From assembly GCA_964199315.1 (NCBI GenBank), contig OZ116702.1:1240001-1304000 (forward strand): 64,000 nt of DNA, in the 5' to 3' direction. The notes under the pieces are model-generated. The model was not told where the DNA came from. It saw only the letters and a program-made list of their open reading frames with translations, and did not search any database. This DNA comes from Orbicella franksi (lineage: Eukaryota). Positions within the stretch are counted from its first letter, which is position 1, and each line of letters opens with the position of its first letter. The translations under genes and the position numbers were made by a program. Shown piece after piece: positions 57,342 through 61,919 of this stretch.

Positions 57342-58367
57342 TAGTCTGCAGTCTGCATTTTGTACCTGGTCTGCATTTTGTCCCCAGTCTACAGTCTGCA
57401 GTCTGCATTTTGTACTGAGCGATTGAACAGTCATTCCTTCACTGCTGAATGTTTGCTGTCTTGCATTATGTTTGCATGGAAGCTATAAGCTTATATTTAT
57501 TAAATCATATCTCGTCTCACTGGGTACGTAAGCTTAAATATTATACTATCAAAATTTTGATGAAGTACTTATTTTAGATTCGTACGTTTGGAACTGTCGT
57601 TTTCATCTGCTATTGTCTTTTGGTTTTGTTGGGTTTGCTTTTTGGGGGGGGGGGTGGGTGGTGCAATGGTGGGGTGAGAAAGGGAGTTTGTTATCATATG
57701 GTTATTTGTGTCAGTGTAGTATTTGACAAGCCCCAGGCATGAGATTTTTATCCTGGTATAGTAATTCCTGGATTTTCAAGGACGACCTAAATGTATTGAA
57801 AGATGTCCAAAGATTTCTGAGGACATTCTGATGTCTTCCATCTAAAATAGCTTGGAAGTTTACTGTCATTTGTTGAACTTTTCTTATCTTTGATTGGCTG
57901 AAGTGTACATATGCAGTTTAGAATGTCTATTCATAGCTCATATTTTTCAGTTGGATGTGACAAATTGGTCCATAGGCATGGATATCCACGAGATCAAAGT
58001 TCTCTCAGCCTCCATGTAGGTTTAAGACGCCCTTCTTGGGTGTGAGAGTTGGCAAGTATATACAAATGGATTTCTCATTCCAGTCTAAGGGCCATCAAAA
58101 TCTTGATTCTGTAGTTCCAGAAAATATCCATACCTCCCTCTCAGAAGGGATTTTTTCTAACACCTCCCCACCCTTCTGGAAATTCCAGTTAAGCTTCATA
58201 CATTTCTTTAAATTTTTTGGTCTTATAGAGTCCCCCACCCCCTAGGAAATTCCAATCCCTTCTGTGGGGGAAGTATGGATATTTTCTGGAACTGGACATA
58301 TGCAGGAAACTCAATTTGCCTTGGTATTTAAATTGGCTCTTAATTTTCATTTAGAATTCCTGTCATC

Positions 58368-61300
58368 ATGGAGGCTTATGCTGCAGAATTTGTTTCTGAA
58401 AGCTGCCCTGCTTTTAAGGATGGCTGTCCCTATTCCAAGCTTACTGAAGATCTTTTCATAGAAGAAATCAAGAAATGCCCTGAGTTCAAACAAGGCTGTC
58501 CATTCAAGAGTACAGGCAGTGTGACTGAAATCCTGGAAGAACTATCCAAGATGCCAGAGTCAAAGCACCACACAGGTGTAGCACATGAGCAGCTACTGAA
58601 CATGCTAAGAGTTGTTCACTCTGAGTCTAAAAGCTTGGAAGAGAAAGTTGGAGAGTGTCCTGTGTTCAAGACAAAGGAAGGATGTCCTTTTAAAGATGCC
58701 AGCAAGGAAGGAAAGCCTTTGATAGAGCCACCCACTGCCGTTCTTGAGAGTCTGACAGCATTGGATGTCAGTGGGCTTAAGGAGAAGTGTCCTGCATTTA
58801 AAGAAGGATGTCCATTTGCCAAGATGGATAATGAAGCCCTTCTGAAAGAAATCAAGAAATGCCCTGAGTTTAAGGACGGATGTGCTTTCAAGGATGCCAA
58901 AACAATAGAAGAAATCTACAGTAAGTTGTCGCAGATGCCGAATAGTGACAAAGATTGTCACCATAAAGATGCTCTCATGAAGACCATGAAAGTCATACAC
59001 AGTGTTGGCCATGAGAAAGCTGACAAGTGCCCAGTGCTTCAGAAAGAAGGCTGTCCTTTCAAGTTTGTTGAGAGTGAAGGGAAGCCACTTGTCAATCCAG
59101 CAGAAACTGTACTTCATGCAGTAGAAGAAAACAAATCAGAGTCTGAAAAACCTGTTGTTCACCTTGTGCCCCTCACAGATTTAAGAGAGACCTGTCCTGC
59201 ATTTGAATCTGGATGTCCGTTTGTGAAAGTTGGGGAGAGAGACTTTGGAAAAGAGCTGGAACTGTGTCCTGAGTTTAGAGAAGGTTGTCCTTATAAGGAC
59301 AGTGAAGTTGTAGGAGATATCTATAAGAAGCTTGTCAGTTTACCTTCTTTCTCCACTGAGGGATCCCATGGTGCAAAACTTTTGGACATTTTTAAGCACA
59401 TCCATGAAGTGTCCCATTCTTTGAGAGAGGAGATGGGTGAATGTCCAGTGTTTGTGACAGATGAGGGATGCCCATTCAAGACAGTCTGCAGTGATGGCAA
59501 GCCACTGATTGAAGTGCTGGATGGTCATCGCTGGACAAAGATTCTGGAGAGCTCTGTTGATGATGTCATAGAAAATGTGAGTCAAGAGATTGAGAAAACA
59601 GAACCACCAATTCACCTCTCTAAACAGCTTAAGAAAGGTACCAAGAAAGTTCACAGAGAAGCAGAAAATGTTCATTTTGTGAAGGAGTTTGCCAAAGGAA
59701 GAATTCAAAGACAGTGGTACAAAGAACTTCTTGCTGATCTCTACTTTGTCTACAGGTAAGATGAAGTCCATTGATATAGTTTTTATTGTGGGGTTGTGTT
59801 TGTTTTTTAAAGAAATAATGAAGGAGTACATGTAAAATTTACTTGTACTTCTTCATTATTTCTTTAAATACTATTTAATAGTATGTAATGTATGATACAC
59901 GTAAACACAACAATTATCCTTGCTAAATTTAGACCCACAGATTTTCTATATTTTATGAAACTTTTTGCGAATTTTGAACTTTGTGAAATTAAAAAGCCAA
60001 TGGGGGCCAACCAAGGCAGTGCTTTAAGGTCATAAGGTGATTATTTTCCATTCTCTCATCACCTGTTTCTGGACATTTTGTTGATAATGTAAGGAGATTT
60101 CAAGTGCACATCAGTCCTGAGAATGCACACAAACTAGGATTTAAAAATTCCTTTGACTGTTCTGAATCTAATTTACTTCACATTCGGAGCCAGCTATGCA
60201 GGGCTTTATTACATAGCTGTGCAGTCATATAAGTCTGTTATTTTTAGGGTTACATTTGCTTGGGAAAACCACCATTTCTCATAACATATATTTGAGCAGT
60301 TCTAGAAAATATCCACCCCTCCCCCCACAGAAAAGATTGGCATTTCCTGAGGTTGGGGGTTCGATGAGACCAAAGCATTTAAAGAAATGTGTGAAGCTTA
60401 ATTGGAATTTCCAGAAGGGTTGTTGGGTATTAGAAAAAGTCTCATCCATAGGGGAGGTATATGGATATTTTCTGGAACTATTGCTTAACTTTCCAAATGT
60501 TGAGATTTTGTTTACTTGTAACATAGCAGAAGCTCATGAAGTGTCTTGGTATCGCTTGTTAGAGCAGTTTTCAATTAAGCGCCCCAAAACCTGCAAACCG
60601 AAGTGCTAGCCTGCGTAGCAGGCATATAAAGGGGAGGGGGTAGGGGAGGAGGAAGGGAATTCGCGAAAAGAAAAAAAAAACAGAGGAGTGGGAGAGGAGA
60701 GGGGAAAAGGAACCGAATTCTCTTCCTCCTCCCTCACCTCCTCCCCTTTATACGCCTGCTATGCAGGCTACTAAAGTACCAGTACATGTAATCATTCTGA
60801 CCTGTTACAAAGGATGCAGACTATACAGTGACCAGATCAAAACTAACAGTTATTACACGTAACTGACACAATGCGTGGGAAAACATGTGCTAATGAGTTA
60901 CAATTGGTTGTGGTTTTCTTATGGATGGAAAAGTGGCATGCAGTTGATGCATAACCAATTACTCAAATGAAAACTGCTCTACTTGTGTGCAGACAATTTT
61001 AACTTGGTGGCAGCCAGTCAGAGATAACTGGGCATTGATATCTGTGCCATTATATTGGTGAGTAATACCAGACCTCTGGTATCCCAAGGGATTCGAAAGA
61101 AGCATTCATTGAGAGACATCTGTTCAGGCTAATTATGTTAGAGTGTTTATGGTGCCCATCCTGATCATTTACATGTATCTTTCTTCCCTCAGGGCTCTTG
61201 AGGAAGAGAGTGAGAAACACAAGGAACATGAATTGTTCAAGGTGGTGCATTTTCCAAAAGAGCTTGGGCGTCTGCAGTGTTTGGAGGAAGATATGGAGTT

Positions 61301-61919
61301 CTATTTTGGAGAGGAATGGAAAGACAGAGTTCCCATGTCTGATGCTACAAAAGCCTACGTTGACAGAATCCATGAAGTTGCTGGCAAAGATCCTGCTCTG
61401 CTGATAGCTCATCACTACACCAGGTACCTGGGCGATTTGTCTGGAGGACAAATCCTGCGCAAAATGGCAATGAAAGCAATGGATCTTCCAAGCACAGGTG
61501 AAGGGGTACAGTTTTATGTCTTTGAAAACATCTCTGACGCAAAGAAGTTCAAGAACATGTATCGATCACGCCTTGATGAACTGAACATCGATAAAGACAA
61601 ATCAGATGAGATTGTTAAAGAAGCAAATTATGTTTTCATGCTGAACATATACTTATTTCAAGAGATAGATGCCTTGGCTGGATTTGTGGACGAGGAACCA
61701 AAGAAGAAAAAGCTGACTGTTGAAGAGATTTACAGCAATGTCGACACCAGTAAAGAATCTGCTGGGGTGTGTCCTTTTGCCACTATGGCTAAGAAGCCTG
61801 CACAAGTAAACACAGCAACTCCAAGTGGTGAAGTAAGAAGCATCAGTCCAGTGCTTTTGGCCATAATTATTGCAGTTGCAGCTATTGTGATAGGGCTGCT
61901 TTTTACCAAAATGAGGTAA
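58368..61919 (+). CDS. HMOX: Heme oxygenase with an N-terminal triple Cys-Pro repeat extension and a C-terminal TM anchor (exons 58368-59755 and 61193-61919; about 704 aa)
   Basis: HO domain: LSKQLKKGTKKVHREAEN (proximal His), LYFVY|RALEEE, FP-KELGRL, AHHYTRYLGDLSGGQIL (HO signature with the distal Asp), F..MYRSRLD; HO-2-like CPF motif (AGVCPFA) and hydrophobic tail VLLAIIIAVAAIVIGLLF. Donor AG|gtaag at 59755, acceptor ccctcag|G at 61193; 2115 nt, in frame. The ATG has a catcATGG context just after a 5'UTR acceptor (catttag). Confidence 0.95.
60560..60981. mobile_element. Nested MITEs in the HMOX intron: outer TAGAGCAGTTTTCA-TIR element containing inner TA|GCCTGCGTAGCAGGC element (60607-60770)
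   Basis: TAGAGCAGTTTTCA at 60560 and TGAAAACTGCTCTA ending at 60981; inner TIRs GCCTGCGTAGCAGGC.TATAAAGGGGAGG and CCTCCCCTTTATACGCCTGCTATGCAGGC, each flanked by TA. Confidence 0.75.

What the first reader, a model, noticed from the sequence alone, without database searches (positions are those of the whole stretch)
58404..59507. The ~130-aa repeat itself looks like an unnamed domain produced by intragenic triplication inside one exon
Seen: the repeats are 128 and 135 aa apart. Units 1 and 2 still share an exact 25-nt stretch (AAGAAATCAAGAAATGCCCTGAGTT), while unit 3 is more diverged. Six Cys and two His positions (H73/H84, H199/H211, H334/H346) are kept in all units, there is no intron between units, and one CP has decayed to CA (C172-A173). 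Inference: selection has kept Cys, Pro, Phe, Gly and His while linkers drifted, which points to a folded ligand-binding module with three Cys pairs and two His rather than disordered linear motifs. Copy number may vary between species, and the unit may occur alone or fused to other enzymes.
Basis: partly seen in the sequence, partly recalled or inferred. Interest (0 to 1): 0.7.

Follow-up and report, generated by a model that had tools for sequence, protein, structure and literature searches.

The report
Tripled Cys-Pro domain on heme oxygenase
The first exon of a coral heme oxygenase gene carries three copies of an old, unnamed ~112-residue domain with six Cys-Pro motifs each, which most likely binds or senses heme for the enzyme it is attached to.

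Summary
Window 58368-59755 is exon 1 of a two-exon, expressed heme oxygenase (HO) gene of 704 aa. It encodes three ~112-aa units, each with three CPxFxxGCP[F/Y] pairs and a helical hairpin.

The unit is a real evolutionary module:
- In 227 distinct units from 155 proteins, the six Cys are 98-100% conserved. Pro follows five of them in 91-100% of units, and one His is 90% conserved.
- dN/dS is 0.06-0.08 in the units and 0.30-0.40 in the linkers.
- One unit precedes HO in choanoflagellates, oomycetes, dinoflagellates and Perkinsus. Octocoral HOs have two and hexacoral HOs three.
- Free-standing forms exist, including a 2-unit paralog 29 kb away, and a chytrid has a RhoGAP fusion.

The triplication is old: each of the three units is orthologous between stony corals and sea anemones.

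No Pfam or NCBIfam model, PDB sequence or known fold matches. I found no paper describing it.

The AlphaFold2 model is moderate (pLDDT 72.7, pTM 0.58). It places the CP motifs in loops around helices.

The function is inferred, not shown. I read it as a structured array of heme-regulatory (Cys-Pro) motifs that captures, buffers or senses heme for the HO core, as the C-terminal HRMs of HO-2 do. Zn or Fe-S binding is the main rival.

The parts
58368..59755 (+). Coding exon 1 of the heme oxygenase gene (aa 1-462 plus 2 nt): three CP-rich units, linkers and the first 47 residues of the HO catalytic domain
   Evidence: ORF. Pfam Heme_oxygenase positions 2-48 match aa 416-462, E 9e-13. RNA contigs are contiguous over 58265-59752 and the donor is at 59755|59756 GT. 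The start Met is conserved in orthologs L011 and L012.
58392..58733 (+). Unit 1 (aa 9-122): CP pairs at C13/C20, C37/C44 and C97/C106; His 73 and His 84
   Evidence: The U1 clade includes sea-anemone U1 (99/94). The AF2 model has pLDDT 72.7 and pTM 0.58.
58776..59102 (+). Unit 2 (aa 137-245): C141/C148, C165/C172 (C172 followed by Ala) and C221/C229; His 199 and His 211
   Evidence: The U2 clade has 100/99 support and includes Actinostola U2.
59181..59519 (+). Unit 3 (aa 272-384), next to HO: C276/C283, C300/C307 and C359/C368; His 334 and His 346
   Evidence: The U3 clade includes Actinostola and Actinia units (94/90). The AF2 model has pLDDT 65.6.
59756..61192 (+). Intron 1 (GT..AG, phase 2), 1437 nt; contains an inverted copy of a MITE-like repeat
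   Evidence: A joint skipping 1437 nt is seen in contigs of three RNA runs. The acceptor sequence was read. Repeat pairs are I1 and I4.
61193..61919 (+). Coding exon 2: rest of the HO catalytic domain, a C-terminal CPF motif and the tail anchor; includes the stop codon
   Evidence: Pfam PF01126 positions 48-204, E 1.6e-54. The best PDB sequence match is human HO-2, E 1e-52. The spliced CDS is 2115 nt, 704 aa plus stop.
61764..61787 (+). C-terminal Cys-Pro-Phe motif (aa 654-661; Cys656), 24 residues before the membrane anchor, positioned like the HRMs of HO-2
   Evidence: The same motif occurs in the HOs of Desmophyllum, Actinostola, Actinia, Aphanomyces and Balamuthia. HO-2 has its HRM Cys at C265 and C282, before the TM segment at 288-316 (PMC8808069).
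61845..61904 (+). Hydrophobic C-terminal tail anchor (aa 681-700); it places the N-terminal units in the cytosol
   Evidence: Read from the sequence. The topology is inferred by analogy with HO-1 and HO-2.
58617..58946 (+). Tract that is 95-100% nucleotide-identical to the free-standing 2-unit paralog 29 kb downstream; probable gene conversion
   Evidence: Sliding identity against L004: 95-100% inside the tract, 67-82% on the 5' flank and 87-92% on the 3' flank. dS is 0.25 for U2 and 0.76 for U1.

Best explanation
SHOWN
- Window 58368-59755 plus 61193-61919 is an expressed, two-exon heme oxygenase gene of 704 aa.
- Its N-terminal 384 residues are three copies of a conserved ~112-aa domain.
- Each copy has three 'CPxFxxGCP[F/Y]' pairs: two before and one after a helix-loop-long-helix segment that carries a conserved His.
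- The domain is old and widespread in eukaryotes. A single copy sits in front of HO in choanoflagellates, oomycetes, dinoflagellates and Perkinsus.
- It was duplicated stepwise to two copies in octocoral HOs and three in hexacoral HOs, before stony corals and sea anemones split.
- It is under purifying selection as strong as in the catalytic core.

INFERRED (about 0.55-0.6)
- The domain is a structured array of heme-regulatory (Cys-Pro) motifs.
- The protein is tail-anchored, so the domain faces the reducing cytosol. There the Cys thiolates, helped by the following Pro and the aromatic residue at +2/+3 and possibly by the helix His as sixth ligand, would bind Fe(III)-heme reversibly.
- The three units plus the C-terminal CPF motif give 18 CP sites. 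They would act as a local heme trap, buffer or sensor that hands heme to the catalytic pocket or gates it.
- This would be an enlarged version of what the two C-terminal HRMs of vertebrate HO-2 do.
- The C-x6-8-C spacing within a pair may also allow a thiol/disulfide switch that turns heme binding off under oxidation.
- The free-standing 2-4-unit paralogs would be soluble or anchored heme buffers or chaperones.
For: Gene model and expression
- ORFs, Pfam HO matches and the RNA splice joint.
- HO catalytic residues are present: the proximal His in KVHREAE and the GDLSGGQ motif. The best solved relative is human HO-2.

Domain reality
- In 227 distinct full-length units from 155 proteins, the six Cys are 98-100% conserved.
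- Pro follows them in 98, 100, 97, 76, 94 and 91% of units.
- Phe at CPxF is 99-100% conserved and the His 90%.
- dN/dS is 0.078 and 0.063 in the units, 0.40 and 0.30 in the linkers, and 0.04 in the HO N-terminus.
- AF2 gives the same helices for U3 and U1. The better model has pLDDT 72.7 and pTM 0.58, with all CP motifs in loops or single turns between helices.

Age and distribution
- The unit tree.
- Named taxa.

HRM reading
- Cys-Pro followed by an aromatic residue is the defining HRM signature.
- The Pro bends the backbone away from the heme face, and CP motifs typically lie in loops joining two helices (PMC10377097).
- HO-2 carries CP HRMs that bind heme through Cys, often with a distal His. 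They form a redox switch and help load heme into the catalytic site (PMC8808069 and the references quoted in it; PMC2742820).
- The host enzyme's substrate is heme.
- The same protein keeps an HO-2-like C-terminal CPF before the anchor.
Against: - No heme binding was measured, and no tool here could place a ligand.
- Six Cys plus up to two His is also the arithmetic of two tetrahedral Zn sites. Several units give weak, sub-threshold hits to Zn-finger or Fe-S models: zf-TRAF in 13 of 73 units, plus zf-TRAF_2, Fer4_11, CCCH types and TAZ.
- Classical HRMs are short motifs in disordered regions, not parts of a conserved fold.
- The fourth Cys tolerates Ala instead of Pro in 19% of units.
- In human cells the HO-2 HRMs were not needed for heme buffering (PMC8808069).
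- AF2 confidence is only moderate.
Confidence: 0.58

Rival explanations
1. The unit is a structural metal-binding domain. The three Cys pairs and the His would chelate Zn, for example as two CCCH/HCCC-like sites, or an Fe-S cluster. The domain would then mediate protein-protein contacts or electron or redox signalling rather than bind heme.
For: - There are six invariant Cys plus one fixed and one frequent His, giving up to eight ligands.
- Recurrent weak hits to zf-TRAF, zf-TRAF_2, zf-CCCH types, TAZ and Fer4_11.
- The C-x2-F-x2-G-C layout resembles the first half of a CCCH finger.
- The AF2 model is only moderately confident without a cofactor.
Against: - No Zn-finger or Fe-S model reaches its threshold in any of the 73 units.
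- Pro after nearly every ligand Cys, with an aromatic residue at +2/+3, is the HRM signature and is not typical of Zn or Fe-S sites.
- Well-defined Zn modules are usually predicted by AF2 with high confidence.
- The first His is not positionally fixed.
- Amoebozoan proteins repeat the CP pair alone, without the His-bearing helices.
Confidence: 0.22
2. The unit is mainly a thiol/disulfide redox sensor. Each C-x6-8-C pair would cycle between dithiol and disulfide and regulate HO stability, localisation or activity without binding heme itself.
For: - The pairing of Cys at short, conserved spacing.
Against: - In HO-2 the switch acts by gating heme binding, so this rival overlaps the main reading.
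- It gives no explanation for the invariant Pro, Phe and His.
- Nothing here tests redox potentials.
Confidence: 0.1
3. This is not a folded domain. It would be a repetitive, mostly disordered array of independent short linear CP motifs, with the ~130-aa periodicity a leftover of duplication.
For: - Classical HRMs are linear motifs.
- The first AF2 model is weak, with pLDDT 65.6 and pTM 0.42.
- Amoebozoan proteins carry arrays of the 24-aa CP pair alone.
Against: - The whole 112-aa unit (profile positions 1-112) is conserved as a block from choanoflagellates to dinoflagellates.
- Non-Cys helix positions are conserved (L51, P55, H77).
- dN/dS is 0.06-0.08 across entire units against 0.3-0.4 in the linkers.
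- The second AF2 model has pTM 0.58 with the same helices.
Confidence: 0.06

Closest known systems
Heme-regulatory motifs (HRMs) of vertebrate heme oxygenase-2 (Cys265-Pro266 and Cys282-Pro283)
   Same: - Cys-Pro followed by Phe.
- Attached to a canonical, tail-anchored HO.
- One CPF motif here sits in the same place, just before the membrane anchor.
- Proposed role in reversible heme binding, redox switching and heme loading.
   Different: - HO-2 has two or three isolated motifs in a flexible C-terminal segment.
- Here 17 further CP motifs lie N-terminal.
- They are organised as three pairs per unit inside a conserved ~112-aa helical module that also exists on its own.
Multi-CP heme sensors: BACH1/BACH2 CP motifs, Hap1 HRM repeats and the ALAS presequence HRMs (Pfam Preseq_ALAS, PF09029)
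   Same: Several CP motifs per protein are used to sense or respond to heme. The link to heme metabolism is shared.
   Different: - No sequence relationship was found. The Preseq_ALAS hits are sub-threshold: best E 0.019 in 4 of 73 units, against a cut-off of 21 bits.
- Those motifs are single CPs in disordered regions, not CPxFxxGCP pairs in a conserved fold.
Cys/His zinc modules (CCCH, TRAF-type and TAZ fingers)
   Same: Cys-x2-Phe-x2-3-Gly-x0-1-Cys spacing, and a Cys6His1-2 ligand count in a small helical domain.
   Different: - No model reaches its threshold.
- Pro follows almost every Cys.
- No CxxC or H-x3-C knuckles.
- No structural match: best Z 4.2, and Foldseek finds nothing at E 0.001 or better.

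Membership tests
Heme oxygenase (Pfam PF01126), for the host gene | Profile match above the curated cut-off over the whole domain | tested here: met
   Positions 2-48 in exon 1 (48.9 bits) and 48-204 in exon 2 (192.6 bits), against a cut-off of 23. Human HO-2 matches at E 1e-52.
Heme oxygenase (Pfam PF01126), for the host gene | Proximal heme-ligand His and the distal-helix GDLSGGQ motif | tested here: met
   KVHREAE at aa 426-433 and GDLSGGQ at aa 543-549 in the spliced protein.
Heme-regulatory motif (HRM / CP motif) | Cys-Pro dipeptide | tested here: met
   There are 17 CP in aa 13-369 and one at aa 656. Pro follows five of the six unit Cys in 91-100% of 227 units, and the fourth in 76%.
Heme-regulatory motif (HRM / CP motif) | Hydrophobic or aromatic residue just after the Pro; motif in a loop between secondary-structure elements | tested here: met
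   Phe at CPxF in 99-100% of units and F/Y at CP[F/Y] in about 100%. AF2 puts all CP motifs outside the long helices. The criterion is from PMC10377097.
Heme-regulatory motif (HRM / CP motif) | Reversible Fe(III)-heme binding through the Cys thiolate, with a regulatory effect | not testable with these tools
   This needs spectroscopy of purified protein. Complex prediction with heme was unreachable.
Zinc fingers (zf-TRAF PF02176, zf-TRAF_2 PF15965, zf-CCCH types, zf-TAZ) and Fer4_11 | Profile match at the family's gathering score | tested here: not met
   The best E-values per single unit are 0.0019-0.06, all below the cut-offs, in at most 13 of 73 units. The 30-bit zf-TRAF_2 score of the 4-unit protein P0023 has no single stretch that passes.
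5-aminolevulinate synthase presequence (PF09029) | Profile match at the gathering score | tested here: not met
   11-12 bits against a cut-off of 21. Only 4 of 73 units hit at E 0.019 or weaker.

The most novel reading that the evidence does not exclude
The unit is an undescribed, ancient eukaryotic heme-binding domain: a folded scaffold presenting six Cys-Pro sites. It would have been the ancestral heme-capture and regulation module of ER-anchored heme oxygenase. In this reading it was kept singly in choanoflagellates and many protists, amplified to 2-3 copies and spun off as free heme buffers or chaperones in anthozoans, and lost in bilaterians, where only the C-terminal HRMs of HO-2 remain.
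Probability: 0.4. Interest if true: 0.75.

Novelty: new variant of a known kind. Interest (0 to 1): 0.62.

Why it matters
HRMs are treated as short, disordered, lineage-specific motifs. How labile heme is captured and delivered to heme oxygenase is still an open question.

A conserved, foldable domain made of paired CP motifs would add three things:
- A tractable model for multi-site, redox-gated heme binding.
- An evolutionary origin for the HO-2-type regulation.
- Candidate cytosolic heme buffers or chaperones, in the form of the free-standing paralogs.

The domain is fused to HO from choanoflagellates to dinoflagellates and amplified in corals, animals in which HO is already used as a stress biomarker. 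It also deserves a family entry, since Pfam has none.

Tried and rejected
1. Complex prediction (HO core P0013:350-570, unit 3 P0013:210-326, plus heme) was sent five times and never answered. There is no result, so docking of the unit on the HO core stays untested.

2. The protein-atlas search gave no usable hit. Foldseek on PDB, AFDB clusters, Swiss-Prot and the ESM atlas, and VIA-align wide, returned only the family's own members or unspecific helical matches with Z 4.2 or less.

3. The profile search also listed large STAND/TIR/Schlafen NTPases with many 'stretches'. Reading P0149 showed a different repeat (QPQFADKCPWEKL...). I reject these as spurious.

4. The 25-nt identity is not evidence of a recent duplication. 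The unit tree and another coral's DNA argue against that.

5. P0247 (HO plus ketoacyl synthase) and P0249 (ubiquitin plus HO) are probably merged gene models. I do not use them as fusions.

6. Six literature searches found no description of the domain. The library lacks most subscription journals, so this is not proof of absence.

7. A region-restricted homolog search with the choanoflagellate unit was uninformative, with 3 hits.

8. The raw RNA reads of run X24 were too few (34 laid, mostly on the flanking repeat) to map transcript ends.
Full report
**What is at the coordinates**

The + strand is open from 58368 to 59756 (463 codons). The last 47 residues match the start of Pfam Heme_oxygenase (positions 2-48, E 9e-13). 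The rest of the domain (positions 48-204, E 1.6e-54) lies in a second open frame about 1.4 kb downstream.

Contigs from three RNA libraries cover 58265-59752 without any joint. They carry one splice, 59755|61193, with GT..AG ends. The acceptor and the reading frame across it were checked.

The gene is therefore 58368-59755 plus 61193-61919, 704 aa. It has:
- the proximal His and the GDLSGGQ motif of a working HO;
- human HO-2 as its best solved relative (E 1e-52);
- a CPF motif at aa 656;
- a hydrophobic tail anchor at aa 681-700.

The closest named protein is the HO of the stony coral Desmophyllum pertusum (84% identity). The window thus comes from a scleractinian-like coral genome of 497 Mb.

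**The observation**

- the 128- and 135-aa spacing;
- the exact 25-nt stretch;
- the 18 Cys positions, the C172-Ala, and the His pairs 73/84, 199/211 and 334/346;
- the absence of introns between the units.

Unit boundaries from a profile are aa 9-122, 137-245 and 272-384. In window coordinates these are 58392-58733, 58776-59102 and 59181-59519.

**Is it a domain?**

Homolog searches found the whole unit (profile positions 1-112) in many proteins.

In an alignment of 73 units that share less than 80% identity, C5, F8, C12, P13, C29, F32, C36, H75, C88 and F99 are invariant.

In 227 distinct full-length units from 155 proteins:
- the six Cys are 98-100% conserved;
- the following Pro is conserved at 98, 100, 97, 76, 94 and 91%;
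- the Phe of CPxF is 99-100% conserved;
- the helix His is 90% conserved.

A second His lies 11-12 residues upstream in about half of the units. Some His is present in that loop in 92% of them, but the position is not fixed.

I compared the exon codon by codon with two other corals (L011, L012):

| Region | dN/dS vs L012 | dN/dS vs L011 |
|---|---|---|
| Units | 0.078 | 0.063 |
| Linkers | 0.40 | 0.30 |
| HO N-terminus | 0.04 | 0.04 |

AlphaFold2 on unit 3 (73-row alignment) gave pLDDT 65.6 and pTM 0.42. On unit 1 (90-row alignment) it gave pLDDT 72.7 and pTM 0.58. Both models have the same elements: two short helices between CP pairs 1 and 2, a helix after pair 2, a loop, and a 24-residue helix bearing the conserved His. 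Every CP motif lies outside the long helices.

I conclude that this is a real module, probably folded, perhaps fully so only with a ligand.

**Is it named?**

- No Pfam-A model reaches its threshold for the exon protein, for the three units, or for any of the 73 aligned units. Only weak Cys-pattern hits appear (zf-TRAF, zf-TRAF_2, CCCH types, TAZ, Fer4_11, Preseq_ALAS).
- NCBIfam gives nothing.
- A profile search of all PDB sequences gives nothing better than E 0.047.
- Structure searches return only the family's own predicted models, including the Stylophora HO and an uncharacterised Stylophora protein, or unspecific helical matches with best Z 4.2.
- Six literature searches found no description.
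- InterPro members other than Pfam could not be searched.

**Distribution and history**

A profile search of 1.84 billion representative proteins found only 272 hits at E 0.001 or better.

Named members:
- One unit in front of HO: the choanoflagellate Mylnosiga, the oomycetes Aphanomyces and Thraustotheca, the dinoflagellates Durusdinium and Gymnodinium, and Perkinsus.
- HOs preceded by only part of a unit or by CP pairs alone: Mucorales and Basidiobolus (the first ~60-78 profile positions) and Balamuthia (two CP-pair stretches matching the first ~45 positions).
- Two units: octocoral HOs.
- Three units: the HOs of stony corals and of the sea anemone Actinostola. The Actinia tenebrosa HO keeps a single unit.
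- Free-standing forms: 2 units in stony corals, 3-4 in octocorals, and 3 with a tail anchor in the choanoflagellate Salpingoeca urceolata.
- A C-terminal addition to an F-BAR/RhoGAP protein of the chytrid Gonapodya.

A maximum-likelihood tree of 53 units places U1, U2 and U3 each in its own clade that holds both scleractinian and actiniarian sequences (support 99/94, 100/99 and 94/90).

The three-unit state therefore predates the split of those orders, and arose in two steps. An HO-proximal type (hexacoral U3, octocoral U2) and a distal type are already separate in octocoral HOs, though the two proximal clades do not resolve as sisters (83/66, open). U1 and U2 group together (86/84), with octocoral U1 weakly inside as sister to hexacoral U1 (92/74), which fits a later copy from a U1-like unit without fixing when it arose.

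The CA at C172 is shared by all hexacoral U2 copies.

The 25-nt U1/U2 identity spans eight identical residues with identical codons. Another coral shows almost the same identity, and CCT GAG TT is fixed in all eight copies compared. It reflects constraint and codon preference, perhaps with micro-conversion. It does not reflect a young duplication.

This genome also holds a free-standing paralog 29 kb downstream of the HO gene, 24 kb beyond the window end (G000:C5:1328276-1329112, minus strand). It has units 1 and 2 plus a short remnant of unit 3. Stylophora shares that same truncation, so the paralog is old.

Even so, window 58617-58946 is 95-100% identical to it at the nucleotide level, while the flanks are 67-92% identical. 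This points to recent gene conversion.

**How it most likely works**

The following is inference.

The signature conserved here is Cys-Pro with an aromatic residue one or two positions on, lying in loops between helices and flanked by Lys. This is the definition of a heme-regulatory motif. The Pro turns the backbone away from the porphyrin and favours thiolate ligation of Fe(III)-heme (PMC10377097).

The enzyme it is fused to degrades heme. Vertebrate HO-2 has CP HRMs that bind heme through Cys, often with a distal His. They form a thiol/disulfide switch and contribute to loading heme into the catalytic site (PMC8808069 and the references it quotes; PMC2742820).

The coral protein keeps an HO-2-like CPF just before the anchor. 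So do the Aphanomyces, Balamuthia and sea-anemone HOs.

There is a tail anchor and no signal peptide, so the units face the reducing cytosol. This argues against structural disulfides.

I therefore read the domain as a structured multi-HRM heme trap, buffer or sensor for HO, possibly gated by oxidation of the C-x6-8-C pairs. On this reading the free-standing paralogs are heme buffers or chaperones. I put this at about 0.55-0.6.

The main rival, at about 0.2, is a Zn or Fe-S binding domain. The ligand count (Cys6 His1-2) and the weak Zn-finger-like hits leave it open. Against it:
- no such model reaches its threshold;
- Pro after almost every Cys is not typical of metal sites;
- the first His is not fixed.

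A pure redox sensor and a disordered motif array are less likely. The reasons are given under the rival explanations.

**Limits**

- No ligand binding was measured or modelled.
- Complex prediction did not complete.
- Taxon names are known for only a minority of hits, so the apparent absence from Bilateria is an impression and not a test.

**Verdict**

The novelty lies in a conserved, amplifiable domain built from paired CP motifs. It is unnamed in Pfam and NCBIfam, and no solved structure or paper known to my searches describes it. Its biochemistry is predicted, not shown.

An earlier first-stage note on the same stretch (s1-196251) proposed a heme-buffering or heme-sensing HO.

Noticed in passing
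window 58617-58946 versus L004 (G000:C5:1328276-1329112, minus strand): A ~330-nt tract of HO exon 1 (end of unit 1 to the start of unit 2) is 95-100% nucleotide-identical to the free-standing 2-unit paralog 29 kb away, while the flanks are 67-92% identical. This is probably recent gene conversion. RNA-contig depth also rises in the tract. In the unit tree, paralog and HO units pair up within a species in two other corals.
   Followed up: partly
window 58113-58293 and about 60319-60460: A MITE-like element with 40-nt terminal inverted repeats (93% complementary) ends 75 nt upstream of the start codon. A second, inverted copy lies in intron 1. RNA-library contig depth over it runs into the thousands, so it is a high-copy repeat, and transcript contigs break at its edge (58260-58265).
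   Followed up: partly
window 61764-61787 (aa 654-661): A C-terminal Cys-Pro-Phe motif sits 24 residues before the tail anchor. It is conserved in the HOs of corals, sea anemones, Aphanomyces and Balamuthia. An HO-2-type HRM near the anchor may therefore be ancestral to eukaryotic HO rather than a vertebrate novelty.
   Followed up: partly
L005-L010 (G000:C1 at 26.76-26.78 Mb and 40.81-40.87 Mb; C14 at 18.38-18.40 Mb): A second, divergent subfamily of the CP-pair unit (35-42% identity). It has C-x8-C first pairs, an extra conserved Cys in an MRDxCKGK motif, and lacks the conserved His. It is encoded one unit per exon, in tandemly repeated gene clusters. Relatives include 3-6-unit proteins of sea anemones (P0070, P0054).
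   Followed up: partly
P0082 (Basidiobolus ranarum, 796 aa): One partial CP unit is followed by three complete heme oxygenase domains in tandem in a single predicted protein.
   Followed up: no
P0046 (Actinia tenebrosa HO, 530 aa): This sea-anemone HO keeps only the HO-proximal unit. Units 1-2 are replaced by three copies of a ~22-aa repeat, each holding one ECPYKG motif.
   Followed up: no
P0195 (Gonapodya sp., 836 aa) and P0066/P0094/P0106 (Amoebozoa): CP pairs also occur at the C-terminus of an F-BAR/RhoGAP protein, and as long arrays of the ~24-aa pair alone in Planoprotostelium and Physarum proteins. The pair, not only the 112-aa unit, is therefore a reusable element.
   Followed up: no
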